Shown: piece after piece, positions 1 to 64,000 of the stretch
Numbering within the stretch: position 1 is the stretch's first letter
Layout of the letters: the number at the start of each line of letters is the position of its first letter
NCBI GenBank assembly: GCA_001643675.2
Contig: LSRY02000003.1
Coordinates: 1,488,001-1,552,000, forward strand
Direction: 5' to 3'
Length of the DNA stretch: 64,000 nt
Origin: Monocercomonoides exilis PA203
Taxonomy: Eukaryota > Protista > Preaxostyla
Notes under the pieces: generated by a model
The model's input: the letters and a program-made list of their open reading frames with translations, nothing else
What the model was told of the DNA's origin: nothing
Databases searched by the model: none
Position numbers and translations under genes: made by a program

Positions 1-140
1 ACTGTTACACTTTGCTCCCTTTCATCACTTCTCCCCTTTATTCCTTCAATGAAATTCCACCTGCAATTTTCCTTCTTCTTCCTCTTTCTCTTTCTCTTCC
101 AATTCCTCTTCTTCTATGCTGCTTCATCTAAATCCTCCTT

Positions 141-3100
141 TCATGAGGTGTAGCTGGCATCTTCCACTTCCCTCTCCTGGTTCTCACAAATCCACCTCGT
201 TGTTTCTTCTTTCTGCTTTTGTCCTGCACCTTCCTCAATAATTTTCTTTCCATCTTCATTCATTTTCTCTCTATTCTCTTCTTCCTCTTCTTCTTTGCGT
301 TCTTCTTCTTCATCATCCTCTTCTTCTTCTTCATTTGCTTCTTCTTCATTTGCTTCTCCCAATCCATTTCTTTCCTTTCATTCAAAAAATCTCTTCAATC
401 CTCAAGACCACATTTCCTTTCATAATATTCAATAAAATCGAGATCTTCGTTTTCTTTCACTTTGCTCATCAGTCTTCCCTCTTTTCTTTCTTTTCCATTT
501 TTTCTCTTTCCAATTTTTGTTTCTGCTTTATTTCTTAAGAAATCCTCTTTTTCTTCATTTTCCTCTTTATCCCCGATTCCGATGATGAATGCAAAGTGAT
601 CCAATCAGTTGAAGCAATGATGATGAGGAGGATGATGAGGAGGATGATGAGGAGGATGATGGGGATAGGGATGAATTTATGTGATATGATGTCGATGAAT
701 TTGAAGAAGAAGAAGAAGCGAATTGAATGTGATGACTGAAGGTCGAGAATTGTGAAGAGAAACGTATCAATCAACAACGGAGAAGTTCACCAGAAATTAC
801 CTTTTCTTGATAACATCTTCTTTATTTATATATCTTTTTCTGCCAAATAAGATCCTCCAAATCCATCAAACATTCAGCTCTATCATCCCCCCTCGCCAAC
901 AAAAAATTGGAAACCTATGTAAATCCCTTTTTCATTCCATCTCTTCTTCTTTCACTTCCCTTCTTTCACAAAAAATCTTCTTTCTTCAAAAATAATTCTT
1001 TGTCAAAGCCCAACACCAGGCATCTTCGTAATATCTCGCATTTCATCTGTCTGTCTAATTTTTCCTTCAAAACTTTTCTTCTTCTTCTTCAAAGCCATCT
1101 AATCCTTCTCTCTTTCAGCACCCTGAATAAAAAAATTAATAATCGCTTCAAAATAAATAACGACAGCAAACCTTCTAAACATATTTTTAAGCCAATGTCT
1201 ATATTTTATCCCATTGGCACCTGTTTTCTTCAATACAATTTCATTATTTCTTCCTTTTTCAAGTGTTTCATCTCTGATTCGCAAATCATCCTTTCCATCA
1301 GTTGTTTCTCCATCAAATGCATCGATTTCTGGTCCTTCTGAAAAATGTGAGATTTATGCATTCTGCTCAAATTCCACCCTCATTATTGAAAAATGTCCTG
1401 TTTTTTGTCAAAAATATCATCTCCAATTCCCTTCCCAATCCCTTCACCCTGGGCACTTTCCATATGAATTTTCTGGCTCAGCTCGATAGCCACCCTACAC
1501 AACGCGACATCCCGCTTTCATTCATTTTCATTCATTTCCACCTCCTCCCCTGAAAACAACACAAAAACATTCAACAGATAAATATTCATATAAATAAAAT
1601 AAATAAAGAACAAACTGCGCTTAGACTGTTTTTTGCCAAACACACTCATTTCCACAGCCATCATCATTCAAAAATTCAATCTCTTCATTTCAGTCTCAGA
1701 ATGGTTGAATACAGCATGGAATGCATCTTCACAAAATACATCGTGTATCTCGCTGAAGGGTCTTTTCAGCCCGTACACATTGTGATGGATGTCCAGAGGC
1801 GTTTTTTCTTTTCGTCCATGATCATCTCCTTTAATAATATTCTCAACCACCAAAAGAAGTGTTTGAGGTTTATCTCATCAACACCTTGCACATGAGGGAT
1901 ATGGCGCATACAAGTGATGGAAGAATATTTTTTGTGGCAGGGAGTAGAAGTTGGGTGTTTTTTTGAATGTTTATATTTCAAGAGGGATTTTTGAATAAAC
2001 AAAATTTGGAGACAAAGGGGTGGGGAAGAGTGGGTGGAGATTTTGAGAAGATTATATAGTAAATATGTAGGGAAGTGGCTGAGGATGGTGAGGAAGATAT
2101 TTGAGGCAAATTGGAGAAATGGATTTTGAAAAGAAAGAAAAGAGGGCAAAAGTGTGCAAGAAGAAGAATATTCTGAAGTGTTCAAATGGAAAAGGGTGTT
2201 TTTTTAGAAGAAAAGATTTTATGGAAGAGACTGAGAATTCTGAAGAAAAGGAGGGGATTGATATTTTCTGATGATTTTGTGAGCTGAATGGAAGAGGGGA
2301 ATGGAAAGGAAAATAAATTGAGTGATATTATCATTTTTTGTTTCTGAGGGGAAAGGAAGGGAAATCGCAAAATGAAATTCAATTGCCTTTGGAAAAATAC
2401 AGCAAGATTGATTACCACAATCTGTTCGTCATATATTTGGTGATTATGTTTTTCTAACCAAACTGAGGTTCATACATCAAGCGAGACGTTTTGGCCAATC
2501 AACAACATCACACAAAGAGTCCTCGTCATCTTCTTCAGAAATGTTAGTTGACTGATTGCACATTTCTCAATAATTTCTTCTTCTTCCACATCATTTCCTT
2601 CTTTTTCATCATCTTCTTCTTCAGATAATCCCCTTTCATTCAATCGACCATTTTCCTCATTTCTCGGTTTGCAAACACAAAATTCGCCTTCTCACAATTC
2701 ACTTGCTTATTCAGCGACAAGCACGCCTGTTATGAACCGCATAGCCAAAAACACACAAAATCTTCTTCAGTCAAATTTTGCTTCTTCTTCTTCTTCTTCT
2801 TTGACTTCGCTCTTCCTCATTCGTTCGCGCATTCACACAGCATCTATCTTCATTTCAACAATTGTGATCCTCCTTTTCTTCTTCAACTCTTTCTTCGATG
2901 AACGAATTTAAAATATTCCTATTTCCATTTCATTCAACTTCCCATTGAATTTATCAAGAAGCATTAAAACCTGCTCAAATAGGAAACGCAAAAGAAATGT
3001 TCATTCTGACATAGAATTTCAGCCAGACCTAACACGGAGATGAAATGGGTAATATTGATCCGGAATAGCCGAACATCAGGCATGCAACAAAAAATAGAGA

Positions 3101-3600
3101 TTGCCTCTGACTTTTTTCATTTGGAAGCTGAAAGAATTCACCGAAAACATAAAGAACAGGACAGGATAGGATGTTTGGGGCGAATGATTATGAGGATGAC
3201 CTTCGACAAATTTCACAACGTCATTTGCCTTCAATGGAACGAGAGGATGATTAAATGAGGAGAACATAATTTATTAGAAAACAAATGATCGAAGGATAAT
3301 TCTATGAAATAAGTGCGTCTGCAGCGCTCAAAAAAGGAGAAATGGGAATGGAAAAAGAAATTGAAAGTTTTGAAGAGCTTGTTGATATGCTTGAAGAAAT
3401 GCATTTTGAAGAGATGAAATAGATGATTCCTAAAAGCAACAAGCGGAATTTGCATTTGATGAAAAGGAGAAATTAGAAGAGGAAATATCGAAGAAATATT
3501 TATATTTGAGCTGACGTTAAGTATTTTGGTAAAATTAAGTGATATGTTCTTCAGTTGAAAAGAAGATGAAAGCGTCTGAATTTTTCAATGACATGGAAAA
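141..3600 (-). pseudogene. Degenerate, apparently intron-containing gene/repeat of unknown function with acidic tracts (mirror of 17715-21200)
   Basis: Short protein-like frames (KTPLDIHHNVYGLKRPFSEIHDVF; IHMESAQGEGIGKGIGDDIF) are conserved with the 56100-58150 paralogue but broken by stops and frameshifts. Confidence 0.4.
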
Positions 3601-3604
3601 TGAA

Positions 3605-4891
3605 TCAAAATTTGAAGAAGAAATAATTGAGGAAATTATGAGAAAGTTCATCATTTCCAGTGATTATAGTGTCAACAGCGCTGAAAGTGAGTGTTTGAGA
3701 AGGAACAAATGTTGAGGCGAGGAGGGTGAGAGAGGCATCTTGGGCATCTGTCATGCGAACAAGAGCGAATTCAATTGTTTTGCATGGACTGAGTTGTGTG
3801 ATTCCGCAGAGATCGGTGTTTGTTCCATTATTTGACACGATTTTGAATGTTGTTATGAGAGGGAGCCATCTGTTGAACTCAACATTATCTGCTTCTCCTG
3901 CATTCCACACTCTTTTTGATTCTGTTGTTGACCCGCACTGATTGAATGGGGATTGGGTGATGCTGCTGCCATTAAAGAACACATCATTACCTCTGCCATT
4001 CGTCGCAGTGTTGCCATCGAAGAAGCAGAATGTGATGAAATTTACTCCATTCATCCAAGTGAAGGTTGCATCCAAATAAATACCAGCTCCGCCGCGTGTA
4101 GATGAAGTTGACGTCAATTCATTATTTACAAATTGGCACTCATTGATTGAAAACTGACTTGGTTTGTTTCCTGGTGGCCAACTGAATGTTAATGATCCCG
4201 CAGCATCACCACCTGAGTTTGAAATGCACTTGCATTTAGAAAACAGGAATTGAAAATTTAACTGATTATTATTTAGTCCAAAATACCAACCAGTTCCGCA
4301 CCAATCTGTTATTGAACAACTTTCCACTCTGTTTTCTGAGAATGAATAAACAGAATTTGATTGTGGCCAGCCAACGTAAGCAGCTCCTCCATGAGCAGCT
4401 GAACAACTTGTGAAATTGGATTTTGTGATGTTAACATTCAACAGATATAAGCAATATAACGCTCCACCACTGTATCCGTTTGTTGAACAATTGAAAAATG
4501 AACACGAAGTGATCGATAAATTTGCGTTTGTGCAATTGACTTTCAGAGCACCTCCTTGATCATTTCCGCTGTATGAATCATTCCATTCGCACCACTCAAA
4601 GAGGTAGCTATTCAAATCAGTAAAGGACAATCTACCAGGTTTCGCTCTTTGGGTTTCGGATCCGTTATATTTTACAAGATCATTTGATGAAGATCGTGTT
4701 TGGTGGAGAAAAGAGGCGTTGAAGGCAGAGAGAGAAGTGAATGGGCTGTTGATGGAAGGGAGAATGGTTCCATCGATGGGGTTGTGGATGTGTTTGAAGA
4801 TGATTGAGATGAATGCGAAAAATATTTGGAGGATTTTGTTTGTCAGAAGAACACGCAAAAATAAAAGAGGAGAAAAAAATAGAAATTTCAT
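3605..4891 (-). CDS. Beta-helix-like GGA-motif surface protein family, 5'-truncated cassette type B (428 aa; ATG and hydrophobic N-terminus supplied by the flank)
   Basis: Open frame with repeated GGA(L/I/V) and FxxN/FxxC motifs, FEWCEW, WCGTGW, FITFCFFDGN and CGxxxxxPCxTI. Family homology starts near HNPIDG. Confidence 0.75.
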   Translation of the reverse strand: MKFLFFSPLLFLRVLLTNKILQIFFAFISIIFKHIHNPIDGTILPSINSPFTSLSAFNASFLHQTRSSSNDLVKYNGSETQRAKPGRLSFTDLNSYLFEWCEWNDSYSGNDQGGALKVNCTNANLSITSCSFFNCSTNGYSGGALYCLYLLNVNITKSNFTSCSAAHGGAAYVGWPQSNSVYSFSENRVESCSITDWCGTGWYFGLNNNQLNFQFLFSKCKCISNSGGDAAGSLTFSWPPGNKPSQFSINECQFVNNELTSTSSTRGGAGIYLDATFTWMNGVNFITFCFFDGNTATNGRGNDVFFNGSSITQSPFNQCGSTTESKRVWNAGEADNVEFNRWLPLITTFKIVSNNGTNTDLCGITQLSPCKTIEFALVRMTDAQDASLTLLASTFVPSQTLTFSAVDTIITGNDELSHNFLNYFFFKF

Positions 4892-7800
4892 CGAAACTCT
4901 CTGTTTTTATTTGTTATTATTCTCCTCAGCAAATTTCGACCTTCAATCAACTTTTCCTATTTGTTCGTCATCATCGTTTATTCCTTCTTCACCTTCTTCT
5001 TCTCCTTCTTCTCCTTCATCTTCTCCTTCTTCTCCTTCTTCTCCGTCTTTTTCTTCTTCTCCTCCTTCACTTTCATTATCATCTATGTTATCTTTTTTAT
5101 CTTCATTCTCAAGTCAGTGTGTACAATAATATTATCTGCAATTTCCTTATGACAAAGAGAAACCACAGATTAATTTTCATGTCTTTCTCTTCTCTTTCCT
5201 TCTCCATCTCCTTCATTTTCATGTGCTTCTTCATTTTCATCATCATCATCTTCTTCTTCTTCAACTCCTCCAACTTTTTCAATGCCATCTTCACTCACTT
5301 GGAGTTGAATCGGAATATCACCTATCTGTTGCATTCATACGCTCCAATCAACAGAGACGCAAAATTGAACTAATAATTATTTCACTTGCATTTCTTTGTC
5401 TCAACAATCAATCACTGAACTAGTCTTCATTTTTCATTCACAATTTTGATGATGAAAAAAGGTAATTTGAACGAATTGATTTCATTTCATTAAAATCGTC
5501 TTCTTTTTCATCAACCTTCTTCAACGAACAACAAAAAAATTGTCATTTCCATTTCATTCAACTCCTGTTAAATCCAGGGCCAAGCGTCATCTTTCATTTT
5601 CTTTTCGGAAGCACAAAAGGATTATTTATTCTATCGCAGAATATCAGCTGAAATTATATGTCAACGGAAGTGATTCAATGTCAAACCAAGAAAAGCCAAT
5701 CATCGGGTGCACGATCCATGAAGGTTGCCTCTGCATAATTCATTTTGAGATTGAAAGAATAACATGAAGCAGAAAGAACAAAGTGGGAAAAGATTTTTTT
5801 GAACAAACAGTTGCAGGGATGGTTTTTGAGAGATTTCACAAGGCCACATGCCTTCAACAAGTCGCGGAAGATGAAATGGGAGAGGAAACATTAAAGAGAT
5901 ATAAGTTTTTGAGTGGATGTCAAGGGTTTTTAAAAGCAAGTGATGATATATTCCTCAAATGAAAAGCAATGAAAGCTTATGAATTTTTCCATGATATGGA
6001 AAATGGTGAAAATTGGAAAATGGAAGGAATAATAAAGAAATTAGAAAAAGTTTATCATTTCCTGTTATTTTTATATCAACTGCGCTGGATGTGAGTGGAG
6101 TTGGAACAAATATCAATGGGGTCTGTTGGGGTCTGCCACAGGCATCTGTATTGGTTCCGTTGTTAGAAACGATTTTGTTCTGAGCAATGAGGGGGAGCCA
6201 GCTATTGAACACATCGCTATTAGCTGTATTGTTATTCCACACTCTTTGTGTTGGAGTTGTTGAGCCACAATTCTCAAACGGAGATTGAATGATGCTGCTT
6301 CCATTGAAAAATACATCATTTCCTCTGCCATTTTTTGCAGTGTTGCCATCGAAGAAACAGAATGTGATGAATTTATTTCCGCTCATCCAGTTATATGTTG
6401 CATAACAGTAAATGGCAGCGCCTCCATAATTAGTAGAGGCAGTCAATTCATTTTTGATAAACTGGCAATCATTAACCAAAAATTGACTCGGTTTGTTGCT
6501 TGGAGGATAACGAAATGTTAAAGAACCAGCAGAATCACCACCAGAATTTGCAATGCACTTGCATTTGGTAAACAAAAATTTTCCGTTTGATGGCATGTCA
6601 TCGAGCAAGAAATACCAGCCGGTTCCACACCAATTTGTTATTTTACAACTTTCCACTCTGTTTTCTGAGAATGTCCAAACAGAATTTGATTGTGGATTCC
6701 TTGTGTGAACTGCTCCTCCATGAGCAGCTGAACAGCTTGTGAAATTGGATTTTGTGATATCAATTTTTAACAAACTATCGCAATATAACGCTCCACCATG
6801 ATTTGTTGTTGAGCATTTGCTATACGAGCAAGAAGTGATTGTGAGATTTGCATTAGTGCAAACAACTTGAAGTGCACCACCAGATGAAGATCCACCATTT
6901 GAATCATTCCATTCGCACCATTCAAAGCGATGACTGTTCACATCAAAAGAAGTCAATCTTCCAGGTGTTTTTCTATCAGTTTTAGTTCCAATATACACCT
7001 TTGCAGCATTTGATGGAGATCGTGTTTGGTGAAGGAAAGAGGCGTTGAAGGCAGAGAGAGAAGTGAATGGGCTGTTGATGGAAGGGAGAATGGTTCCATC
7101 GATGGGGTTGTGGATGTGTTTGAAGATGATTGAGATGAATGCGAAAAATATTTGGAGGATTTTGTTTGTCAGAAGAACACGCAAAAATAAAAGAGGAGAA
7201 AAAAATAGAAATTTCATCGAAACTCTCTGTTTTTATTTGTTATTATTCTCCTCAGCAAATTTCGACCTTCAATCAACTTTTCCTATTTGTTCGTCATCAT
7301 CGTTTATTCCTTCTTCACCTTCTTCTTCTCCTTCTTCTCCTTCATCTTCTCCTTCTTCTCCTTCTTCTCCGTCTTTTTCTTCTTCTCCTCCTTCACTTTC
7401 ATTATCATCTATGTTATCTTTTTTATCTTCATTCTCAAGTCAGTGTGTACAATAATATTATCTGCAATTTCCTTATGACAAAGAGAAACCACAGATTAAT
7501 TTTCATGTCTTTCTCTTCTCTTTCCTTCTCCATCTCCTTCATTTTCATGTGCTTCTTCATTTTCATCATCATCATCTTCTTCTTCTTCAACTCCTCCAAC
7601 TTTTTCAATGCCATCTTCACTCACTTGGAGTTGAATCGGAATATCACCTATCTGTTGCATTCATACGCTCCAATCAACAGAGACGCAAAATTGAACTAAT
7701 AATTATTTCACTTGCATTTCTTTGTCTCAACAATCAATCACTGAACTAGTCTTCATTTTTCATTCACAATTTTGATGATGAAAAAAGGTAATTTGAACGA

Positions 7801-9361
7801 ATTGATTTCATTTCATTAAAATCGTCTTCTTTTTCATCAACCTTCTTCAACGAACAACAAAAAAATTGTCATTTCCATTTCATTCAACTCCTGTTAAATC
7901 CAGGGCCAAGCGTCATCTTTCATTTTCTTTTCGGAAGCACAAAAGGATTATTTATTCTATCGCAGAATATCAGCTGAAATTATATGTCAACGGAAGTGAT
8001 TCAATGTCAAACCAAGAAAAGCCAATCATCGGGTGCACGATCCATGAAGGTTGCCTCTGCATAATTCATTTTGAGATTGAAAGAATAACATGAAGCAGAA
8101 AGAACAAAGTGGGAAAAGATTTTTTTGAACAAACAGTTGCAGGGATGGTTTTTGAGAGATTTCACAAGGCCACATGCCTTCAACAAGTCGCGGAAGATGA
8201 AATGGGAGAGGAAACATTAAAGAGATATAAGTTTTTGAGTGGATGTCAAGGGTTTTTAAAAGCAAGTGATGATATATTCCTCAAATGAAAAGCAATGAAA
8301 GCTTATGAATTTTTCCATGATATGGAAAATGGTGAAAATTGGAAAATGGAAGGAATAATAAAGAAATTAGAAAAAGTTTATCATTTCCTGTTATTTTTAT
8401 ATCAACTGCGCTGGATGTGAGTGGAGTTGGAACAAATATCAATGGGGTCTGTTGGGGTCTGCCACAGGCATCTGTATTGGTTCCGTTGTTAGAAACGATT
8501 TTGTTCTGAGCAATGAGGGGGAGCCAGCTATTGAACACATCGCTATTAGCTGTATTGTTATTCCACACTCTTTGTGTTGGAGTTGTTGAGCCACAATTCT
8601 CAAACGGAGATTGAATGATGCTGCTTCCATTGAAAAATACATCATTTCCTCTGCCATTTTTTGCAGTGTTGCCATCGAAGAAACAGAATGTGATGAATTT
8701 ATTTCCGCTCATCCAGTTATATGTTGCATAACAGTAAATGGCAGCGCCTCCATAATTAGTAGAGGCAGTCAATTCATTTTTGATAAACTGGCAATCATTA
8801 ACCAAAAATTGACTCGGTTTGTTGCTTGGAGGATAACGAAATGTTAAAGAACCAGCAGAATCACCACCAGAATTTGCAATGCACTTGCATTTGGTAAACA
8901 AAAATTTTCCGTTTGATGGCATGTCATCGAGCAAGAAATACCAGCCGGTTCCACACCAATTTGTTATTTTACAACTTTCCACTCTGTTTTCTGAGAATGT
9001 CCAAACAGAATTTGATTGTGGATTCCTTGTGTGAACTGCTCCTCCATGAGCAGCTGAACAGCTTGTGAAATTGGATTTTGTGATATCAATTTTTAACAAA
9101 CTATCGCAATATAACGCTCCACCATGATTTGTTGTTGAGCATTTGCTATACGAGCAAGAAGTGATTGTGAGATTTGCATTAGTGCAAACAACTTGAAGTG
9201 CACCACCAGATGAAGATCCACCATTTGAATCATTCCATTCGCACCATTCAAAGCGATGACTGTTCACATCAAAAGAAGTCAATCTTCCAGGTGTTTTTCT
9301 ATCAGTTTTAGTTCCAATATACACCTTTGCAGCATTTGATGGAGATCGTGTTTGGTGAAGG
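4710..9361. repeat. Direct tandem duplication, unit 2326 bp (4710-7035 / 7036-9361), present only in the left arm of P1
   Basis: Identical ORFs offset by 2326 (4719/7045, 5540/7866, 5955/8281). The right arm has one copy. Confidence 0.95.
5955..7217 (-). CDS. Chimeric family member (420 aa): N-terminus of type B fused in frame to the variable domain of type A
   Basis: The N-terminal ~60 aa are identical to 3605-4891 and the remainder is identical to 8281-10368. Crossover lies within AAAGAGG at 7036-7042. Confidence 0.8.
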   Translation of the reverse strand: MKFLFFSPLLFLRVLLTNKILQIFFAFISIIFKHIHNPIDGTILPSINSPFTSLSAFNASFLHQTRSPSNAAKVYIGTKTDRKTPGRLTSFDVNSHRFEWCEWNDSNGGSSSGGALQVVCTNANLTITSCSYSKCSTTNHGGALYCDSLLKIDITKSNFTSCSAAHGGAVHTRNPQSNSVWTFSENRVESCKITNWCGTGWYFLLDDMPSNGKFLFTKCKCIANSGGDSAGSLTFRYPPSNKPSQFLVNDCQFIKNELTASTNYGGAAIYCYATYNWMSGNKFITFCFFDGNTAKNGRGNDVFFNGSSIIQSPFENCGSTTPTQRVWNNNTANSDVFNSWLPLIAQNKIVSNNGTNTDACGRPQQTPLIFVPTPLTSSAVDIKITGNDKLFLISLLFLPFSNFHHFPYHGKIHKLSLLFI

Positions 9362-17710: not shown

Positions 17711-17714
17711 TTCA

Positions 17715-54720: not shown

Positions 54721-55677
54721 AACTCATCCCTCTCAATCCACTCAACCCTCTTCCTCCACGCCCACAACTCCATCGATGGCGCCATCCTCCCCGACCTCAA
54801 CAGCCCATCCACTTCTCTCTCTACCTTCAATGTTTCTTTTCTCAGCCAAACACGCTCTTTATCAAACGCTGCTGTGAAATATAACGGATCCGAAAATCAA
54901 AAAGCGAAACCTGGAAGATTGTCCTTTACTGATTTGAATAGCTATCTCTTTGAATGGTGTGAATGGAACGATTCAACTGGTGGATCAAGTTATGGTGGTG
55001 CACTTTATGTTAGTTGTACAAATGCAAATCTCACAATCACTTCCTGCTCTTTTGAAAATTGCTCAACAAGTGATCATGCCGGAGCGTTATATTGTGAATT
55101 GTTGTTAAATGTGAACATCGCAAAATCCAATTTCACAAGTTGTACAGCTGCCCATGGAGGGGCAAATTGCATAGCTTGGCCACAGTCATCCTCTGTTTGG
55201 TCATTCTCAGAAAACAGAGTGGAAAGTTGTTCAATCACAAATTGGTGCGGAACTGGTTGGAATTTTGGACTAAATAATAATCAGTTAAATTTTCAATTCC
55301 TGTTTTCCAAATGCAAGTGCATTTCAAACTCAGATGGTGATGCTGCGGGATCATTAACATTTTATTGGCCTCCACAAAATAAACCAAATCAATTTTTAGT
55401 TAATGATTGCCATTTCATAAACAACAAATTGACAAGTTCATCAACTTCCTATGGTGGCGCTGCGCTGTGTTGCACAGCAACTTATTCCTGGATGAGCGGG
55501 TTTAAATTCATCACATTCTGCTTCTTCGATGGAAACACCGCCAAAAATGGCAGAGGAAACGATGTTTTCTTCAGTGGCAATGCCATATCTCAATCTCCAT
55601 TTGAGAATTGTGGTTCAACAACCCCAACAAAAAGAGTGTATAATAATGGACAATCTGAAAACGCTGAAAAAAAATGA
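54721..55677 (+). pseudogene. Mosaic cassette type H (5'- and 3'-truncated)
   Basis: Frame open from 54706 after a TGA. The 267-aa ORF combines segments of types B, C, D and E. Confidence 0.75.
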
Positions 55678-55689
55678 CCGATTCTAGCT

Positions 55690-58150
55690 TTTCTTTCCAA
55701 ATTCTCCAATGAAATGCTTTTCCTGCTTCCATCTCTTATTTTTTCTTTCTCTATCATCTCCTCTCCTCTCATTCCTTCTTTGACTCATTTATTCAAAACT
55801 TTTGATTTCTTCTGCATTTCGTCATTTACCCCTATTTGTTATTTCTTCATTCAAATTTATCCTCTGTTTATCCAAATACATTTCTTTGTGTAAATTCCTG
55901 TTTCTTCTCTTCTCAAATCAAATTTCCTTCTCAAACTACATTTCCAAATATCTTCTTCTTTTCATTCAAAAAAAAAAATCTCTTCAATTCTCTCAATCAT
56001 ATTTCCATTCATCATGCTCTCTAAACTCTCCTAACTATCTTCATTCTCATCATTCTATTTATTTTCTTTTCTATTTTCTTTTCTATTTTCTTCTCGTTTC
56101 TGTTCCTGTTTCATTTCTTCAAAAATATCTTTCTTCATTTCTCTAACAATCTCTTGTGAAGACGCAAAATATGAAGAAATTCAATCAAATGGCGTGAATG
56201 AAGAAAAAGAAGAAGAAGAAGAAGAAGAAGAAGGAGAAGGAGAAGGAGAAGAAGGAGAAGAAAAAGAAGAAGAAGAAGAAGAAGAAGAAGAAGAAGAAGA
56301 AGAAGAAGAAGAAGAAGAAGAAGAAGAAGAAGAAGAAGAAGAAGAAGAAGAAGAAGAAGAAGAAGAAGAAATTGTGCGATATGAAATGACATCTATACAT
56401 TGGAAGAAGAAGATGATGATGCAGGAATTGCACAAGATGATCGGCTGCTGAAAAATGTGAAGGCGAATGCTAATAAATAAAAACAAAAATTTTCGCAGAA
56501 TTAATCTTTTCCTTCTTTCTTCTTCCGTTTTTGTATCTTTTCCTGCATATAAGATCCTCCAAATCCATCAAACATTCAGCTCTATCATCCCCCTCGCCAA
56601 CAAAAAATTGGAAAGCTATGTAAATCCCTTTTTCATTCCGTCTCTTCTTCTTTAACATCCCCTCTTTCTCAAAAAAATCTTCTTTCCTCAAAAATAATTC
56701 TTCGCCAAAGGTTAATGCCAGGCATCTTCGAAATATCTTGAATTTCATCAATCTTCATTTCATTTTTCTTCCTTGCTTTTCTTTTTATTCTTCAAAGCCA
56801 TATAATCCCTCGTTCTTTCAACATCCTGAACAAAAAAATAAATAATCACTTCAAAAAAATAATAATAACAGCAAACCTTCAGAACCTATTTTTAAAGGCA
56901 ATTTTCTGTTTTTTATCCCATTGGCAACTATTTTCTTCAATTCAATTTCATTATTCCTTCCTTTTTCAAGTGTTTCATCATCTGATTCGCAAATCATCCT
57001 TTCCATCAGTTGTTTCTCCATCAAATGCATCGATTTCTTGCTCTTCTGAAAAATGTGAGATTTATGTATTTAACTCAAATTCCATCTTTCTCATTGAAAA
57101 ATATCCTTGTTTTTCGTCTGAAAATATCATCTCCAATTCCCTTCCCAATCCCTTCACCCTGGGCACTTTCCATATGAATTCGCTCTCCCAACTCGGTGGT
57201 CACCCTGCACAACGAGATATCCCGCTTTAGTTCATTTTCATTCTTTTCCGCCTCCTGCCCTGAAAACAACACAAAAACAATCAACAGATAAATATTCATA
57301 TATAGAAAAATTAATAAATACCAAACTGCGCATCGATTGCATTTTGTTAAACACACTCATTTCCACAGCCATCATCATTCAAAAAATAAATCAATCTCTT
57401 TATTTCAGTCTCAGAATGGTTGAATACAGCATGGAATGCATCTCCTCAAAATACATTGTATGTCTCACTGGAGGGTCTTTTCAGTTCGAGCACATCGTGG
57501 TGGATGTCCAAAGGGGTTTTTTCTGTTTTTGGCATGATCATCTCCTTTAATAATATTCTCAACGATACAAAACAGTATTTGAGGTTTATCTCATCAACAC
57601 CAGGCACATGAGGGATATGGGGCAGAGAAGAGATGGAAGAATATTTTTTGTGGCAGGGGGTGGGAGTTGAGTGGTTTTTGGAATGTTAATATTTCAAGAG
57701 GGGTTTTTGAATGAAAGAAATTCTGAGACAAAGGGGTGGGGAAGAGTGGGTGGGGATTTTGAGAAGATAATATAGTAAATATGTAGAGAAGTGGCTGAGG
57801 ATGGTGAGGAAGATATTTGAGACAAATTGGAGAAATGGAATTTGGAAGAGAAGGAAAAGAGGGTAAAAGCTTGAAAGAAGAGGAAAATTGAGAAATGTTG
57901 AAAGGCTTGAAAGAGGAGCGCTTTTATGAGAGAAGAAAGGAGGTGAGAAGATATTTTGGAAGAGACTGTGAAAGGTGAAGAAAATGAATGGATTGATATT
58001 TTCTGAGAATATTGAGGGCTGAACGGAAGAGGAAAATAACAAAGAAAAAAAAGAAAGAACTGAGAGATATTTTCATTTTCTATTTCCGAGGGGAAAGGAA
58101 GGGAAATTGCCCAAAGGAATCAATGATTTTTGGAAAACCAACATTGTTGA
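55690..58150 (-). pseudogene. Diverged paralogue of the degenerate gene/repeat at ~1-2400 and 18900-21337
   Basis: Collinear similarity (ILQIHQTFSSIIP; IRKSSFPSVVSPSNASIS; MVEYSMECI frames). Confidence 0.5.
56200..56370 (+). repeat. (GAA)n microsatellite; pure 35 units at 56266-56370
   Basis: Direct inspection. Confidence 0.97.
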
Positions 58151-59294
58151 TTTACAAAAATCTATTGCAATAGATTTTGCGATGAGGGTTTTCATATTCC
58201 TCTTGAAGGCAACTTATCAAATACAATGTTTTATCTCATCGGCAACATCATATAAATCACTCTAACATATTTCCACGGAAAAATCATTGAAGTTTTTGAG
58301 ATTTCTCCATCTCCACATGCATATTCTGCTTCTTCTTCTTCTCACTTCGTATCGGATGCTCGTATGTCGAGTGCATTTATACAGCTCAATTCGGCAGAGT
58401 CGCTGAATTGAATAAAAAATTATTTCATTTACTTCCCTTCATCTCTTCAATCAATCACTGAACTAGTCTTCATTTTTCATTCACAATTTTGATGATGAAA
58501 AAAGGTAATTTGAACGAATTGATTTCATTTCATTAAAATCGTCTTCTTTTTCACCAGCCTTCTTCGACGAACAACAAAAAATTGTCATTTCCATTTCATT
58601 CAAATTCTCATCGAATTCAGGGCCAAGCGTCATCTTTTATTTTCTTTTCGGAAGCACAAAAGGATTATTTATTCTATCGCAGAATATCAGCTGAAATTGT
58701 ATGTCAACGGAAGTGATTTAATATCAAACCAAGAAAAGCCGATCATCGGGTGCACAATCCATGAAGGTTGCCTCTGCATAATTCATTTTGAGATTGAAAG
58801 AATTCACAGAAAACAAAAGGAGCAGGGCAGAAGACGTTATTTGGAACGAACGATTATGTGGATGATCTTCGAGAGGTTGCATTATTACATGCGCCTTCAA
58901 TATATCGCAGAAGATGAAACAAAGAGAGAAAGCGGTTGTTTCAGGAAGATCAATAATCGAAGGATAATTCTATGAAATAAGTGCGTCTGCAGCGCTCAAA
59001 AAGGGAGAAATGGGAGTGATAAAAGAAACAGATATTTTTGAAGAGATTGTTGCTATGCTTGAAGAAATGTATTTTGAAGATACGACAGCAATGAATCTTT
59101 TTTCATGAGCTTAATTTGTAGTTGATGGAGAAGAAAAATTAGATGAGGTAATGACGAAGAAATATTTTTGTCTTGTTGATGTTATGGATTTCTGAAAAAA
59201 ATAATGATGATATATACTCCAATTGAAAAAGCTATGATAGCTTATGAATTTTTCTATGATATGGAAAATGGTGAAAATAAGAAAATGGAAGGAA

Positions 59295-61382
59295 TCATAA
59301 AGAAATCAGAAAAAAGTCATTATTTCCTGTTGTTTTTGTGTAAACCGCGCTGAAGGTGAGTGTTTGAGTTGGAACAAATATTGAGGAAAGGAGGGTGAGA
59401 GAGGCGTCTTGGAGGAGGGAAATGAAGCCAGTGAGGGCATACTCGATGGTAGCACATGGGGTTTGTTGGGGTCTGCCACAGGCATCAGCATCAGTTCCGC
59501 TGTTAGAAACGATTTTGTTCTGAGCAATGAGAGGGAGCCAGCCATTATACACTGCATTGTCAGCCGTTCCTTGATTCCACACTCTTTGTGTTGGAGTTGT
59601 TGAGCCACAATTCTCAAACGGAGATTGAGTGATTGCATTGCCACTGAAGAACACATCGTTTCCTCTGCCATTTGTGGCAGTGTTTCCATCGAAGAAACAG
59701 AATGTGATGAATTTGAACCCGCTCATCCAGGAATAAGTTGAAAGAAAATAAATGGCAGCACCTCCATATGTCGAAGAAGCAGTTAATTTATTGTTTATGA
59801 ATTGGCAATCATTAACAAAAAATTGATTTGGCTTATTTACAGGAGGATTTGAAAATGTTAGAGAACCAGCAGAATTACCACCAGAATTTGCAATGCACTT
59901 GCATTTGGAAAATAGAAATTGAAAATTTGTATAATCATTTCCTAGAGCAAAATACCAACCAGTTCCGCACCAGTTTGTTATTGAACAACTTTCCACTCTG
60001 TTTTCTGAGAATGTCCAAACAGAATTTGATCGTGGACTTGTAGCATGGACTGCTCCTCCATGGGCAGCTGTACAGCTTGTGAAATTGGATTTTGTGATAT
60101 CAATTTTTAACAAACTATTGCAATATAACGCTCCGGCATGATCGCTTGCCGAACATTTGTTGAACGAACAAGAAGTGATTGTGAGGTTTGCATTTGCACA
60201 ATAAACATAAAGCGCTCCTCCATGGACAGCTCCACCAGTTGTATCTTTCCATTCGCACCATTCAAATTTGTGGCTGTTCAGATCAAAAGAATCCAGTCTT
60301 CCAGGTTTCGCTCTTTGAGATTCAGTTCCAACATGTACAACAGCAGCATTTGGTGAAGATCGTGTTTGGTGAAGAAAAGAGGCATTGAATGCAGAGAGAG
60401 AAGTGGATGGGCTGTTGAGGTTGGGGAGGACAGCACCATCGATGGGGTTGTGGGTGTGGATAAAGATGGTTGAGTGGATGGAAAGAGATGAGCGAAGGGA
60501 GAAGGAGGGGATTGAATTGGTGTTGGTATTGGTGTTTGTGGAAGAGAGGGAAGAGGAAGAGGTGGTTGAGGTGAATGGATTGAGTGAGTGTGAGGGAAGG
60601 GATGGAAGTGATAGAGGGGATTGGGGAGATGAGATGTTGGAGAAGAGGGTGTTTGAGAGATGGAGATTGAGGTGGATTTGGAGGTGAGGATGGGATTGGT
60701 GATGGATATGGAGAGGGGAAGGGAAAGAGGAAATAGAAGGGGAAAGGGAAGGGGAAGAGGAAGAAAAAGAAGAGGATGAGGATGAGGATGAGGAAGATGA
60801 AGGAGAAGGGGAAAGGGAAGGGGAAGGAGAAGGGGATGGGGAAGAGAGGGAAGAAGGAGAAAAAAGGAAGGGCTGGACGAGGGAGACGAATGAGGAGAAA
60901 GAGGAGTGAGAGATGGAGAAGGAGGCAGGGATTGGGGAGTGGGCATGTGGGAGGAGATTGTTTGGGGTGGAGAAGAGGGGGAAGGAGAAGATGGCTGGTT
61001 GGTGGGTGGTGAGGGAGAAGTTTGTGAGGGCGATGGAGGCATGGGCAGAGAGGAAGAGGGGGCAGTGGTGGTGGTGGTGGCTGTTGGTGAGGGAAGGTGG
61101 GTGGATGGTGCAAGTGGAGGAGCAGATGGAGGCAGTTGAGTGGTGTTGGGCAGTGAGGAGTGGGCAACCAGCGAGGGGGATGATGTTGAGATGGGTCACA
61201 CACAAGGAGGTGTTGATGAGGGCGAAGCTTGTCTGAGCACCACAGATGTGATTTCCCGATGCATGCTCCACCTTGTCTGGGCGAGCGCCTCTGATGATGC
61301 TGTTTGCGATGTTCTCTCCACGAACCAGATTTATGGTGAGGAATGCAGCGAGTATTTGAGCTGATACTGTGATCCTAATCAT
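59295..61382 (-). CDS. N-terminally complete family member type A2: signal peptide, Ser/Pro/His linker, mosaic variable domain
   Basis: ATG at 61382 gives MIRITVSAQILAAFLTINLVRG. Intact ORF next to the P3 centre. The N-half is close to type A and the C-half differs in its loops. Confidence 0.85.
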   Translation of the reverse strand: MIRITVSAQILAAFLTINLVRGENIANSIIRGARPDKVEHASGNHICGAQTSFALINTSLCVTHLNIIPLAGCPLLTAQHHSTASICSSTCTIHPPSLTNSHHHHHCPLFLSAHASIALTNFSLTTHQPAIFSFPLFSTPNNLLPHAHSPIPASFSISHSSFSSFVSLVQPFLFSPSSLSSPSPSPSPSLSPSPSSSSSSSSSSSFSSSSPSLSPSISSFPSPLHIHHQSHPHLQIHLNLHLSNTLFSNISSPQSPLSLPSLPSHSLNPFTSTTSSSSLSSTNTNTNTNSIPSFSLRSSLSIHSTIFIHTHNPIDGAVLPNLNSPSTSLSAFNASFLHQTRSSPNAAVVHVGTESQRAKPGRLDSFDLNSHKFEWCEWKDTTGGAVHGGALYVYCANANLTITSCSFNKCSASDHAGALYCNSLLKIDITKSNFTSCTAAHGGAVHATSPRSNSVWTFSENRVESCSITNWCGTGWYFALGNDYTNFQFLFSKCKCIANSGGNSAGSLTFSNPPVNKPNQFFVNDCQFINNKLTASSTYGGAAIYFLSTYSWMSGFKFITFCFFDGNTATNGRGNDVFFSGNAITQSPFENCGSTTPTQRVWNQGTADNAVYNGWLPLIAQNKIVSNSGTDADACGRPQQTPCATIEYALTGFISLLQDASLTLLSSIFVPTQTLTFSAVYTKTTGNNDFFLISL

Positions 61383-61651
61383 TTTCAAACTGTGATGCAA
61401 TTTGATTGGAATGAATATGGATGAAGGCTTAATTGGTGGAAAGGGGAGAGATGCAACGTGAAGCGAAAATCGAAGAGGAAATCTTATGAATCGTTGATAA
61501 TATTGTTAAATTGCTTGCTTTTGTGCATGTGGATAACAATTTATTTCTTGTTTGCATTCGTTTCTCTCGCGTGCGCTCAATTTTTTATTCGGAAATTAAA
61601 TAGATTTTTTTTGAAACAATTATTTTTCGGCTGAAGAATTCATTTTGATGA

Positions 61652-64000
61652 ATAATTTGATGATTTATTTTCATGAAAGATATAATTTCGATATTGCAGA
61701 TAATGCCCCAACAATCTCCTCTATTAACTTGAGAAATGGTTGAAATGTATGTATTTGGAAATGTGAGAATCTGAAAAAAATATTGGCATCTCAAATAAAT
61801 ACAAACTGTTTCGAATCACAGCCAATGACTGACAAACAACAGTTGATGATTTGAAAAGAAATGTTTTTTAATCAAAAAACTATAATCCACCGAAACATTT
61901 TTTTTTCTTTTTTTGAAATCCACAAATTTGGAAATTAATCTGTGAAATACAAAATTCAACTTTATTTTTAATGAAAACTAAAAAAAGAAAACAAGTGTGT
62001 GAGAAAAAAATAACATTTATAATAAATTATGAATAAACGAACAACGAAATGTATTTGTGGTGCTTCAAATATCCGAGGAGCTTTCGAAACAGTTGAGACT
62101 GCTATCGCACATATTTTTATTCAAAAGTCATTTTCTCAAAAAATTTTATCAGAATTTCTTTGATGAATAAATCTTCTGAGAAAATCAGTTTTATTTTGGT
62201 TGAATGTCAGAAACGGAGTTTGATTTCATGTATTGATAATACTCGTGAAATTGATGAAAATTTTGAATTTCTTCTTCGATTTTTAAAAAAACAGATCTGA
62301 GAACAATATTTCTTTCAATAAACATTCACTTTTTCATCCCAAATGAAATTCTGGAATGAATGAGATAATTGGAGATTATTTTTGAAATCATAACTTTTTT
62401 CGGTGAAAATACTTTTTTCTTCAATAATTGTTTTTCATATTAATGATTCAATAACTGTTTTTACATTATTTATTTTTCAAAATTGTTTAACTTATCTTTC
62501 AAAATTATTCAAATTCAGCATTTTTTTCAAAATTTAATTTGTGAAAAATAGGTTTTTGGATGAATGTTTGAAAGTGATGATGAATTAATATTCAGTTAAC
62601 ATTTGAAAAAAAGGATGAGAAATTGAACCTCGATTTTTATTGTTTGTGAATTAACTCGAAAATTTCTGATTTTTCGGGAAAAAATCATCTTCATGAAAAT
62701 CAGATAATTTTCAAATGAATTCACATCACATCGTGAAATTGCGCACAATTCTTTCAATAAAAGATATTGATATTTTAATATATTCCATAAAGCAATGAAT
62801 AATACATCAAGAATTCCGAAAGTGCATTGATAGATTTATTCAGATGTGAAAATTTTTTGTTTTCAGCATTTTGAATTGATGCTAATTAATTCCTTCAATT
62901 CACAAATGTGTTATCGAATAATGTGAGGTGAATTCATTTGAAAATTATCTGATTTTCATGAAGATGATTTTTTCCCGAAAAATCAGAAATTTTCGAGTTA
63001 ATTCACAAACAATAAAAATCGAGGTTCAATTTCTCATCCTTTTTTTCAAATGTTAACTGAATATTAATTCATCATCACTTTCAAACATTCATCCAAAAAC
63101 CTATTTTTCACAAATTAAATTTTGAAAAAAATGCTGAATTTGAATAATTTTGAAAGATAAGTTAAACAATTTTGAAAAATAAATAATGTAAAAACAGTTA
63201 TTGAATCATTAATATGAAAAACAATTATTGAAGAAAAAAGTATTTTCACCGAAAAAAGTTATGATTTCAAAAATAATCTCCAATTATCTCATTCATTCCA
63301 GAATTTCATTTGGGATGAAAAAGTGAATGTTTATTGAAAGAAATATTGTTCTCAGATCTGTTTTTTTAAAAATCGAAGAAGAAATTCAAAATTTTCATCA
63401 ATTTCACGAGTATTATCAATACATGAAATCAAACTCCGTTTCTGACATTCAACCAAAATAAAACTGATTTTCTCAGAAGATTTATTCATCAAAGAAATTC
63501 TGATAAAATTTTTTGAGAAAATGACTTTTGAATAAAAATATGTGCGATAGCAGTCTCAACTGTTTCGAAAGCTCCTCGGATATTTGAAGCACCACAAATA
63601 CATTTCGTTGTTCGTTTATTCATAATTTATTATAAATGTTATTTTTTTCTCACACACTTGTTTTCTTTTTTTAGTTTTCATTAAAAATAAAGTTGAATTT
63701 TGTATTTCACAGATTAATTTCCAAATTTGTGGATTTCAAAAAAAGAAAAAAAAATGTTTCGGTGGATTATAGTTTTTTGATTAAAAAACATTTCTTTTCA
63801 AATCATCAACTGTTGTTTGTCAGTCATTGGCTGTGATTCGAAACAGTTTGTATTTATTTGAGATGCCAATATTTTTTTCAGATTCTCACATTTCCAAATA
63901 CATACATTTCAACCATTTCTCAAGTTAATAGAGGAGATTGTTGGGGCATTATCTGCAATATCGAAATTATATCTTTCATGAAAATAAATCATCAAATTAT
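61652..64000. repeat. Palindrome P3 (visible part): left arm to 62724, spacer 62725-62927, right arm 62928 to window end
   Basis: Pairing sum 125652 (62701/62951; 61652/64000). Homologous to the P1 centre. Confidence 0.97.

What the first reader, a model, noticed from the sequence alone, without database searches (positions are those of the whole stretch)
1..64000. Palindrome of palindromes: alternating-orientation chain of a ~25.5-kb unit
Seen: the homologous centres P1 (11825) and P3 (62826) have a midpoint of ~37325, essentially the P2 centre. Beyond P2's near-identical arms the mirror continues in diverged form (C at 22273 vs G at ~51960; 18900-21337 vs 55690-58150; A vs A2). The P1 and P3 spacers are in the same orientation. 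That is expected for tandem copies of an inverted dimer (s1-U-s2-U'-s1), or after a spacer flip, but not for a simple mirror about P2. Inference: amplification through a hairpin-ended or inverted-dimer intermediate (ODIRA-like, fold-back, or concatemer of a hairpin-ended replicon).
Basis: partly seen in the sequence, partly recalled or inferred. Interest (0 to 1): 0.85.

Follow-up and report, generated by a model that had tools for sequence, protein, structure and literature searches.

The report
Chained giant palindromes on hairpin transposons
In a chromosome of the mitochondrion-less protist Monocercomonoides exilis, a cluster of surface-protein-like genes is built from adjoining giant mirror-image duplications that each turn around on a small hairpin-forming mobile element; a two-palindrome block of about 51 kb occurs twice, which looks like old duplication plus ongoing copying between arms, not a free 25-kb replicon.

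Summary
The window (M. exilis chromosome C25:1488001-1552000) holds palindromes P1 (centre 11825), P2 (about 37115) and P3 (62826). P1 and P3 are homologous (86-89%) and their spacers lie in the same orientation.

- Arm cores are 99.3-99.9% identical by substitutions. P2's 13.9-kb cores have 15 substitutions. Divergence sits in the outermost 1-2 kb, which are paralogous genes.
- Every axis coincides with the axis of a dispersed foldback element. There are three families, each with at least 35-40 copies.
- One more P2-like centre (P4) follows, 35.8 kb beyond P3. None precedes P1.
- The unique part of the P2 arm occurs exactly twice in the genome.
- Centre spacing is 50, 25.3, 25.7, 35.8 and 46.6 kb, so there is no strict period.

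Best reading: hairpin elements seeded fold-back inverted duplications. A two-palindrome module was then duplicated in direct orientation long ago (7-14% divergence). Arms have since been kept or re-made identical.

This scan has already noted element-centred palindromes many times elsewhere in this genome. The genome paper does not mention them.

The parts
1..11734 (.). P1 left arm. It begins 932 bp before the window. The near-identical core is 955-11734.
   Evidence: inverted match to 11916-22270. Core substitution divergence in the outer alignment block is 0.28%; the outer 1.9 kb is 6.7% diverged.
3812..9466 (-). Arm-specific tandem duplication (offset 2332 bp, 92.7%) found only in the P1 left arm. 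It creates an extra chimeric family gene, ORF 5955-7217.
   Evidence: the left arm has three family genes and the right arm two. The N-terminus of the 420-aa ORF equals that of ORF 3605-4891, and its C-terminus equals that of ORF 8281-10386.
11477..12173 (.). s1-type foldback element at the P1 axis. Inverted repeats are 11477-11734 and 11916-12173; the loop (spacer) is 11735-11915.
   Evidence: at least 35 dispersed copies of about 700 bp on many contigs (68-78%), each matching on both strands. The element centre (11825) equals the palindrome centre.
11916..22270 (.). P1 right arm. Its outer 0.9 kb (21359-22270, a family gene) is also the diverged outer end of the P2 left arm.
21359..22725 (-). 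Diverged outer end of the P2 left arm. It is a paralogous family gene plus its upstream region, 19% diverged from 51504-52898.
   Evidence: identity switches sharply at 22725 / 51504.
22726..36634 (.). P2 left-arm core (13.9 kb). It holds three family genes on the minus strand, plus a 4.5-kb stretch present only twice in the genome.
   Evidence: 15 substitutions in 13909 bp, 12 of them in one patch at 25087-25399. The remaining differences are homopolymer indels; 24240-28780 has only the two arm copies at high identity.
36507..37722 (.). s2-type foldback element at the P2 axis. Outer inverted repeats are 36507-36634 and 37595-37722. Inner inverted repeats are 36890-37105 and 37383-37598 (96-97%). 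The loop is 37106-37382.
   Evidence: at least 40 dispersed copies (73-83%) on many contigs; the copy in L008 is solitary, with 82% inverted repeats and no large palindrome.
36635..36889 (.). A 255-bp element with its own 35-nt terminal inverted repeats, nested in the left inverted repeat of the s2 element. It accounts for most of the asymmetry of the 960-bp P2 spacer.
   Evidence: (pair I6), 38: related copies at -19449..-19197 and at 144758-144968 / 145385-145597; a homologue lies on the same side in the P4 spacer (70% direct vs 60.5% inverted; shuffles 54%).
37595..51503 (.). P2 right-arm core, the mirror of 22726-36634. It includes the 689-aa family ORF 40685-42754.
51504..52898 (+). Diverged outer end of the P2 right arm (family gene 'G').
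54722..62731 (.). P3 left arm (core 55695-62731). It is homologous to the P1 arms: module a 89%, module b 86%, outer gene about 77%.
62480..63172 (.). s1-type foldback element at the P3 axis. The spacer 62732-62920 is in the same orientation as the P1 spacer.
   Evidence: 87.6% to the P1 element. Spacers are 81.6% identical direct and 56% inverted.
62921..64000 (.). Start of the P3 right arm, which continues to window coordinate 70919, outside the window.

Best explanation
The window is the core of a roughly 170-kb cluster of a gene family specific to Monocercomonoides exilis. The family encodes all-beta, possibly beta-helix-like, probably secreted proteins. The cluster lies on a 2.55-Mb chromosome-sized contig.

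Three adjoining giant palindromes (P1, P2, P3) and a fourth just outside the window (P4) form two paralogous pairs, P1/P3 and P2/P4.

Step 1. The anatomy is shown; the process is inferred. Each palindrome turns around exactly on a pre-existing hairpin-forming foldback element. I infer that an intrastrand fold-back at the element's inverted repeats, during replication or break repair, copied one flank backwards. The copy rejoined the chromosome inside an inverted paralogue of the gene family. That would explain why identity drops sharply inside paralogous genes at the outer ends.

Step 2. The structure is shown; the mechanism is inferred. The likeliest route is unequal recombination between same-orientation family genes at its ends. 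This gave P1-P2-P3-P4 with all homologous spacers direct.

Step 3. Inferred. Since then the two arms of each palindrome have been kept or re-made almost identical, by arm-to-arm conversion or by repeated re-copying from the hairpin. Meanwhile the paralogous palindromes diverged by 7-14%.

The equal P1-P2 and P2-P3 spacing follows from this layout. It is not the period of a replicon. The consequence is twin, divergently oriented gene copies on either side of an AT-rich centre.
For: Identity of the genome:
- One search returns MONOS_ proteins, two of them (P0002, P0012) on a contig of 2548433 bp.
- (PMC8767320) give 101 contigs and 82,301,135 bp.

Axis coincidence in three independent element families:
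- The s1-type element spans 11477-12173, centre 11825, which equals the P1 centre.
- The s2-type element spans 36507-37722. Its loop centre is offset from the arm centre by about half of a nested 255-bp insertion.
- P5 has its centre at 145176.5, which equals the centre of a 412-bp foldback with at least 40 copies.
- A solitary s2-type copy exists without any large palindrome.

Age layers:
- Arm-core substitution divergence is 0.1-0.8%.
- Modules a and b are 99.6-100% and 97-99.7% identical within a palindrome, but 89% and 86% between P1 and P3.
- P2 and P4 share their inner 1 kb at 93-95% and the nearest gene at 84%.

Direct orientation of both spacer pairs.

Sharp boundaries inside paralogous sequence.

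Two-tier structure, seen independently at P5. Its 9.8-kb cores are near-identical apart from one diverged patch. The mirror then continues at 86-88% out to at least 19 kb from the centre.

That the arms are separate real loci:
- A 12-substitution patch in P2.
- A 2332-bp duplication in one arm of P1 only.
- Different flanks on the two P2 arms.
- Asymmetric spacers.
- The redundant contig C98 reproduces P4, including its arm-specific variants, with 0 substitutions.
Against: - No sequencing reads could be laid, so depth, reads spanning the spacers and spacer isomers are untested.
- The order of events cannot be read from the sequence, because a palindrome is its own mirror image apart from its spacer. 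Frequent spacer flips would erase the orientation argument.
- Four independent fold-backs at inherited seeds would mimic concerted evolution.
- P2/P4 are less diverged in their inner 1 kb (about 6%) than P1/P3 (11%). A single duplication event does not predict this.
- 21 kb of unrelated sequence separates P3 from P4, whereas P1 and P2 overlap.
- I could not take my own genome-wide census of elements with and without giant palindromes.
Confidence: 0.55

Rival explanations
1. A simple nested mirror. One large fold-back inverted duplication about the s2 element copied the B arm together with an already palindromic P1, giving P3. The P3 spacer later flipped by recombination between its arms. P4 arose in a separate event.
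For: Mirror collinearity of all modules from -940 to 70906, stopping at the same modules on both sides. P1-type palindromes abut both outer ends of the P2 arms. P5 shows that old large mirrors with a re-homogenised core do exist here.
Against: Both homologous spacer pairs (P1/P3 and P2/P4) are direct, so two independent flips are required. Because P1 and P3 are palindromes themselves, the mirror collinearity carries no information beyond their homology. This reading does not explain the s1-s2-s1-s2 alternation that includes P4.
Confidence: 0.17
2. The chain is a decayed concatemer or integrated copy of an inverted-dimer replicon. It would have arisen by ODIRA-like closed forks at s1 and s2, a hairpin-capped 25-kb linear molecule, a 51-kb inverted circle, and integration or rolling amplification.
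For: The topology U' s1 U s2 U' s1 U s2, with direct spacers and junctions on pre-existing interrupted inverted repeats, matches the ODIRA product class. ODIRA is described in PMC4689423 and PMC10766183.
Against: An ODIRA triplication leaves the first s1 and the last s2 non-palindromic, whereas all four centres here are palindromic. Copies are not of equal age. The unique part of the unit exists only twice. Periodicity does not continue. No replicon genes were found. The only extra contig, C98, is an indel-noisy redundant copy of the chromosome with 0 substitutions, not a free unit.
Confidence: 0.1
3. Independent parallel events without concerted evolution. A non-palindromic unit carrying the s1 and s2 seeds was duplicated long ago. 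Each of the four seeds then made its own recent fold-back duplication.
For: Arm cores are almost free of substitutions, as expected for young events. The seeds are hairpin elements that would be hot in every copy. Earlier unchecked notes from this scan report many such palindromes in this genome.
Against: It needs four events with matching module content on the new sides. The outer arm modules are graded, 87% and 97% rather than either 100% or unrelated. P5 has an old 86-88% mirror outside its near-identical core. Both favour old palindromes that were re-homogenised.
Confidence: 0.12
4. An assembly artefact, in which fold-back chimeric nanopore reads or mis-joins in the Canu assembly created the palindromes.
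For: The assembly is ONT-only with read N50 8.9 kb, shorter than the 13.9-kb arms. The differences inside the cores are mostly homopolymer indels. No reads could be examined.
Against: Turn-arounds fall exactly on natural foldback elements with asymmetric spacers of 181-960 bp, not at random spacer-less points. There are arm-specific substitution patches and an arm-specific 2.3-kb duplication. The two P2 arms have different flanks that are 11-25% diverged. The palindromes are interior to a 2.55-Mb contig; the genome paper's largest full-length chromosome is 2.54 Mbp. C98 independently reproduces P4.
Confidence: 0.04

Closest known systems
Large palindromes of mammalian sex chromosomes, maintained by arm-to-arm gene conversion (human Y P1-P8, primate X; PMC8600007, PMC8327919)
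   Same: Arms of many kb are more than 99% identical around a unique spacer. They carry multi-copy gene families. Arms are far more alike than paralogous palindromes are to each other. From my own knowledge, human Y P1 also contains smaller palindromes inside its arms.
   Different: Arms here are 6-14 kb rather than tens of kb to Mb. The organism is a unicellular, apparently asexual gut protist. Every axis is a mobile foldback element. Identity falls off sharply inside paralogous genes. There is no cross-species evidence of age.
Palindrome formation initiated by inverted repeats after breaks or fork errors (reviewed in PMC7999016; homology-mediated end-capping, PMC3834830; distant inverted repeats as a source of rearrangements, PMC10164571). 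From my own knowledge: the Tetrahymena rDNA palindrome, and the yeast and CHO experiments of Yao and of Tanaka.
   Same: A pre-existing interrupted inverted repeat sits exactly at the axis, its loop becomes the spacer, and one flank is copied in inverted orientation.
   Different: The known cases are experimental, somatic or tumour events, or programmed rDNA processing. They usually give terminal or dicentric products. Here the products are interstitial, stable and part of the reference genome. They are seeded by three transposon families and joined back within paralogous genes.
ODIRA inverted triplications (PMC4689423, PMC10766183)
   Same: Units alternate in orientation. Junctions lie at pre-existing interrupted inverted repeats at both ends of the unit. 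Homologous spacers are in direct orientation.
   Different: There is no triplication of one unit. Copy ages are unequal. All four junctions are palindromic. No origin or extrachromosomal form has been shown. The seeds are 0.4-1.2-kb foldback elements, not repeats of a few bases.
Foldback (FB-type) transposons and MITEs with long terminal inverted repeats (from my own knowledge: Drosophila FB elements promote rearrangements)
   Same: The central elements are AT-rich, 0.4-1.2 kb, almost entirely inverted repeat, and dispersed in dozens of diverged copies.
   Different: Target-site duplications, the transposase partner and mobility were not examined here. Their link to kb-scale flank palindromes is, as far as I could find, not described for this organism.

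Membership tests
ODIRA-type inverted triplication | Inversion junctions lie at pre-existing interrupted inverted repeats. | tested here: met
   The axes of P1/P3, P2 (and P4, in degraded form) and P5 coincide with dispersed foldback elements. These repeats are long (130-350 bp), not short.
ODIRA-type inverted triplication | Three copies of one unit, the middle one inverted. The outermost copies of the two junction repeats remain non-palindromic. | tested here: not met
   The unique 4.5 kb of the P2 arm occurs exactly twice in the genome. All four consecutive centres are palindromic.
ODIRA-type inverted triplication | All copies arise in one event, so they are of equal age. | tested here: not met
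   Substitution divergence is 0.1-0.8% within arm cores, against 11-14% (P1/P3) and 6-16% (P2/P4) between homologous palindromes.
ODIRA-type inverted triplication | The unit contains a replication origin, and a hairpin-capped linear or circular inverted-dimer intermediate exists. | not testable with these tools
   Origins are unknown in this organism.
Large palindromes with arm-to-arm gene conversion (sex-chromosome type) | Arms of many kb are more than 99% identical around a non-duplicated spacer. | tested here: met
   Cores of 6.0-13.9 kb show 0.1-0.8% substitution divergence. Spacers are 24-960 bp.
Large palindromes with arm-to-arm gene conversion (sex-chromosome type) | Arms carry members of a multi-copy gene family. 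| tested here: met
   34 family copies lie between window coordinates -4.4k and 163k. They face away from every centre. Homologues are M. exilis proteins only.
Large palindromes with arm-to-arm gene conversion (sex-chromosome type) | Concerted evolution: arms within a palindrome are more alike than homologous palindromes that split earlier. | tested here: inconclusive
   The pattern is present: 99.6-100% within against 86-89% between, with homologous axes and spacers. Independent recent fold-backs at inherited seeds would give the same pattern. No outgroup genome is available.
Inverted-repeat-seeded fold-back duplication | The axis lies on an inverted repeat that exists independently of the palindrome. 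| tested here: met
   There are dozens of dispersed copies, each limited to the element length. The one copy I could inspect with flanks (L008) has no extended palindrome.
Inverted-repeat-seeded fold-back duplication | Evidence of the initiating break or fork error and of how the far end was resolved. | tested here: inconclusive
   Outer boundaries are sharp and lie inside inverted paralogous genes. This is compatible with homology-mediated resolution, but the event itself cannot be observed.
Concatemer of a hairpin-ended linear replicon (poxvirus-like or linear-plasmid-like) | Units are equal and carry replication or resolution genes, and free monomer or dimer forms exist. | tested here: not met
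   17 large ORFs scanned against Pfam gave no replication or resolution domain, only two weak sub-threshold hits. The arms consist of a host gene family. Units are unequal in content and age. Free forms could not be tested.

The most novel reading that the evidence does not exclude
The foldback elements and the gene family form a self-renewing palindrome system. Hairpin elements repeatedly trigger re-copying of one arm onto the other, starting at the centre, with tracts of about 6-14 kb that end inside paralogous genes. This would keep twin, divergently oriented genes identical while creating hybrid genes at the tract ends. At times a hairpin-capped or inverted-dimer molecule would be excised and reintegrated, spreading whole two-palindrome modules. 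That would be a natural, germline-equivalent counterpart of ODIRA acting as a gene-family diversification and amplification mechanism.
Probability: 0.1. Interest if true: 0.8.

Novelty: new variant of a known kind. Interest (0 to 1): 0.5.

Why it matters
Palindrome formation seeded by inverted repeats is known mainly from yeast and cell-culture experiments, tumours and programmed rDNA processing. Concerted evolution of palindrome arms is known mainly from sex chromosomes.

Here both appear together in the ordinary chromosome of a deep-branching protist. The palindromes are seeded by at least three families of mobile hairpin elements, stacked side by side, and duplicated as a higher-order module.

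If read-level data confirm it, M. exilis would offer a natural system with many replicate events. It could be used to ask how hairpin transposons shape gene-family clusters, how far re-copying runs from the centre, and how hybrid genes arise at the boundaries.

It also matters in practice. About 35% of this assembly is 'unclassified repeat' (PMC8767320), and structures like this one probably account for part of that.

Tried and rejected
Only one solitary copy (L008) could be inspected.
- Gene function:
  - Pfam gave no hit for the 10 family ORFs. The other ORFs gave only weak sub-threshold hits.
  - The AlphaFold model is confident only for the first 200 or so residues, which are all-beta.
  - Foldseek against PDB gave nothing at E <= 0.001. 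The weak hits are nearly all parallel beta-helix proteins, so 'beta-helix-like' is only a suggestion.
- Rfam and tRNA scans: nothing found.
- Using the outer 'c' genes to decide whether P3 is a mirror or a direct copy of P1: all cross-pairs are 76-79%, so they are uninformative.
- Looking for older mismatches confined to the element repeats, as a signature of fold-back priming. This is seen only for the inner repeats of the s2 element, which are cut off from the arms by the nested insertion. Elsewhere identity runs to within about 30 bp of the loop.
- A third copy of the B arm, or B-like sequence in the predicted neighbouring units: only family-gene-level similarity was found.
- Literature: no paper in the library links Monocercomonoides with palindromes.

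Full report
WHERE THIS IS

The window is G000:C25:1488001-1552000. The genome has 82,301,135 bases in 101 contigs. The family proteins encoded here find only 'MONOS_' proteins of Monocercomonoides exilis, two of them (P0002, P0012) on a contig of 2,548,433 bp.

The genome paper (PMC8767320) describes exactly this assembly. It was built with Canu 1.8 from ONT reads (N50 8.9 kb, DNA sheared to about 20 kb) and polished with Nanopolish and ten rounds of Pilon. It has 101 contigs, and its full-length chromosomes range from 0.86 to 2.54 Mbp. C25, at 2,548,433 bp, fits the upper figure.

The paper contains neither 'palindrom' nor 'inverted'. No paper in the library links the genus with palindromes.

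Self-BLAST of the window, and of a 264-kb stretch I assembled around it (window coordinates -100000 to 164000), gives these palindromes:
- P0: centre -38403.
- P1: centre 11825, arms -932..11734 and 11916..22270.
- P2: centre 37114.5, arms 21359-36634 and 37595-52898.
- P3: centre 62826, arms 54722-62731 and 62921-70919.
- P4: centre 98613, arms 92156-98272 and 98954-105061.
- P5: centre 145176.5, arms 134437-145164 and 145189-155935.

P1 and P3 are homologous throughout. Module a is 89% identical, module b 86%, and the outer genes about 77%.

The mirror about P2 is collinear out to -940 on the left and 70906 on the right, and then stops.

The P1 and P3 spacers are 81.6% identical in direct orientation. 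Inverted, they are 56%, the same as shuffled sequence.

WHAT THE AVERAGE IDENTITIES HIDE

Substitutions pile up in the outermost 1-2 kb of each arm. These ends are paralogous family genes with 7-19% divergence. Identity then switches sharply to almost complete.

For P2 the switch is at 22725 / 51504. The 13,909-bp cores differ by 15 substitutions. Twelve of these lie in one 310-bp patch at 25087-25399. The other differences are homopolymer-run indels.

Core substitution divergence is 0.11% for P2, 0.28% for the outer alignment block of P1, 0.65% for P3, 0.13% for P4 and 0.79% for P5. The P3 and P5 values are dominated by single patches.

Identity runs to within about 30 bp of each spacer.

THE CENTRES ARE MOBILE HAIRPIN ELEMENTS

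- P1 and P3. The central roughly 700 bp of P1 (11477-12173) has 258-bp inverted repeats and a 181-bp loop. It has at least 35 dispersed copies on many contigs at 68-78%, each matching on both strands and each limited to about 700 bp. P3 carries the same element at 87.6%.
- P2. The central element spans 36507-37722. It has at least 40 dispersed copies of 0.8-0.96 kb at 73-83%. Its outer 128 bp are the innermost part of the P2 arms. Its inner repeats (216 nt, 96-97%) and 277-bp loop lie in the 'spacer'. The rest of the spacer is a 255-bp element with its own terminal repeats, nested in the left repeat. That insertion explains why the arm midpoint (37114.5) and the loop centre (37244) differ by about half its length.
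- P4. It carries a degraded version of the same centre, with the nested element on the same side: 70% direct against 60.5% inverted, with shuffles at 54%.
- P5. Its centre is exactly the centre of a third foldback family of 412 bp with at least 40 copies at 77-90%.
- Control. The one dispersed s2-type copy whose flanks I could inspect (L008) is solitary. Its repeats are 82% identical and it has no extended palindrome.

So three independent element families sit on three independent kinds of axis, with the arms continuing directly out of the element repeats. Elements inserted into older spacers would leave non-complementary spacer remnants on either side. None is seen.

CONTENT OF THE ARMS

tblastn with the 689-aa ORF finds 34 family copies between -4.4k and 163k, and none in the 95 kb to the left. 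On both sides of every centre the genes point away from it.

The family has no Pfam domain. The N-terminal 200 or so residues fold as an all-beta structure with pLDDT 80-90. Foldseek finds nothing significant; the weak hits are nearly all parallel beta-helix proteins.

The 701-aa ORFs start with a sequence that looks like a signal peptide. That is my reading of the output and was not tested.

IS THE STRUCTURE REAL?

Internal evidence argues strongly against fold-back read chimeras or mis-joins:
- The turn-arounds are on natural elements with asymmetric spacers of 181-960 bp.
- The arms carry arm-specific substitution patches.
- P1's left arm alone has a 2,332-bp tandem duplication that makes a chimeric gene.
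- The two P2 arms continue into different flanks that are 11-25% diverged.
- Contig C98 (25.6 kb) is a redundant copy of window coordinates 79350-105027. It has 62 indels but zero substitutions. It therefore reproduces the whole P4 palindrome, including the 22 positions at which the two arms differ.

IS IT A PERIODIC CHAIN?

Partly. The centre types alternate s1, s2, s1, s2 over P1-P4, and both homologous spacer pairs are direct. A simple mirror about P2 would need two spacer flips.

The chain ends there:
- No s2-type centre lies left of P1. The nearest inverted repeats are an unrelated 477-bp-arm foldback at -6664 and P0.
- P4 lies 35.8 kb from P3, with 21 kb of unrelated sequence in between.
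- P4 shares only its inner 2.2 kb with the P2 arms.
- The unique part of the P2 arm (24240-28780) exists exactly twice in the genome.
- P5 has a different seed.
- Centre spacing is 50.2, 25.3, 25.7, 35.8 and 46.6 kb.

The equal 25.3 and 25.7 kb intervals follow from the layout P1 | B s2 B' | P3. P1's extra 2.3 kb on one side is offset by one extra gene (about 2.8 kb) on the other.

AGES

Within palindromes, modules a and b are 99.6-100% and 97-99.7% identical. Between P1 and P3 they are 89% and 86%. P2 and P4 share their inner kb at 93-95% and the adjacent gene at 84%.

So the duplication of the two-palindrome module is old relative to the last homogenisation of the arms.

P5 shows the same two tiers independently. 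Its 9.8-kb cores are near-identical. The mirror then continues at 86-88% out to 125845 on the left and beyond 164000 on the right.

I take this as evidence that the palindromes are old and that their cores are repeatedly re-homogenised, either by arm-to-arm conversion or by renewed fold-back copying from the hairpin. Four independent recent fold-backs at inherited seeds cannot be excluded without an outgroup genome.

MECHANISM I COMMIT TO (confidence about 0.55)

1. Hairpin elements seed fold-back inverted duplication of one flank. The new copy is resolved within an inverted paralogue, which gives the sharp outer boundaries.
2. A type-1 plus type-2 palindrome module was duplicated in direct orientation. 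The simplest route is unequal recombination between same-orientation family genes at its ends. These are the plus-strand genes at -755..-21, 52185-53153 and 54919-55665. The arm-specific chimeric gene in P1 shows that such unequal exchange happens in this cluster.
3. Arms have evolved in concert since then.

What is shown: the anatomy, the element families, the age layers and the orientations. What is inferred: fold-back as the process, the order of events, and conversion.

COMPARISON WITH KNOWN SYSTEMS

ODIRA (PMC4689423, PMC10766183) shares the junctions at interrupted inverted repeats and the alternating orientation. The defining triplication, the equal copy age and the non-palindromic outer junctions are not met. 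Origin and intermediate are untestable here.

The closest analogues in behaviour are two. One is the sex-chromosome palindromes with arm-to-arm conversion (PMC8600007, PMC8327919). The other is inverted-repeat-initiated palindrome formation (PMC7999016, PMC3834830, PMC10164571).

What is new relative to these is the combination found in a protist autosome-like chromosome: mobile foldback seeds from several families, side-by-side stacking, a higher-order direct duplication of a palindrome pair, and boundaries inside paralogous genes.

EARLIER NOTES OF THIS SCAN

The scan has already recorded element-centred giant palindromes many times on other pieces of this genome. Examples are s1-466179, s1-468335, s1-466260 and s1-463979. 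I reached my reading before seeing these notes. They agree with it, but they are unchecked AI notes and are not used as evidence. What this finding adds is the higher-order module and the test of the replicon idea.

VERDICT

This is a new variant of a known kind, of moderate interest.

Noticed in passing
window 3812-9466 (ORF 5955-7217): A 2,332-bp tandem duplication is present only in the left arm of P1. It creates an in-frame chimeric family gene: the N-terminus of the gene at 3605-4891 joined to the C-terminus of the gene at 8281-10386. It shows unequal exchange between adjacent paralogues that has not yet been copied to the other arm.
   Followed up: partly
window 32183 vs 42042: A single-base difference in a run of G is the only reason the same gene reads as a 550-aa ORF in the left arm of P2 and a 689-aa ORF in the right arm. 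It may be a residual nanopore homopolymer error rather than a real frameshift.
   Followed up: no
window 25087-25399 vs 48827-49141: A 310-bp patch holds 12 of the 15 substitutions between the 13.9-kb P2 cores. No close donor was found in the genome; the best other match is 77% on C38.
   Followed up: partly
G000:C98:1-25606 (L017, L026, L027): The whole 25.6-kb contig is a redundant copy of C25:1567350-1593027 (window coordinates 79350-105027). It has 62 indels and no substitutions, so it is probably an unmerged, poorly polished contig. One end lies at the outer end of the P4 right arm.
   Followed up: yes
G000:C25:1622437-1643935 (L025, L028, L029; element at L028:971-1382): P5 is a palindrome with 10.7-kb arms and a 24-bp loop, centred exactly on a 412-bp foldback element that has at least 40 dispersed copies. 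An older mirror at 86-88% continues to at least 19 kb from the centre. Ordinary self-BLAST missed P5 because it crosses the diagonal.
   Followed up: yes
G000:C25:1445494-1453700 (L019, L011): P0 is an inverted repeat with 2.7-kb arms (99.8%) around a unique 2.75-kb spacer. It lies outside the gene-family cluster and has no foldback element identified at its centre.
   Followed up: no
window 22760-24240: This stretch at the outer part of the P2 core is itself a dispersed repeat, with at least 35 copies at 75-84% on many contigs. Its nature is unknown; it may be another gene family or a transposon.
   Followed up: no
protein P0009 (another contig of the genome): One annotated homologue of the family is fused in its gene model to DDE nuclease domains of the HARBI1 / PIF-Harbinger type (PF01609, PF13359). 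This hints that Harbinger-type transposases are present and could mobilise the small inverted-repeat elements.
   Followed up: no
window coordinates -7412..-5915 (L021) and 71291-72962 (L013): Two more foldback elements of other families, with arms of 477 and 599 bp at 99.2-99.4% identity, flank the P1-P3 block. Neither has seeded a large palindrome.
   Followed up: partly
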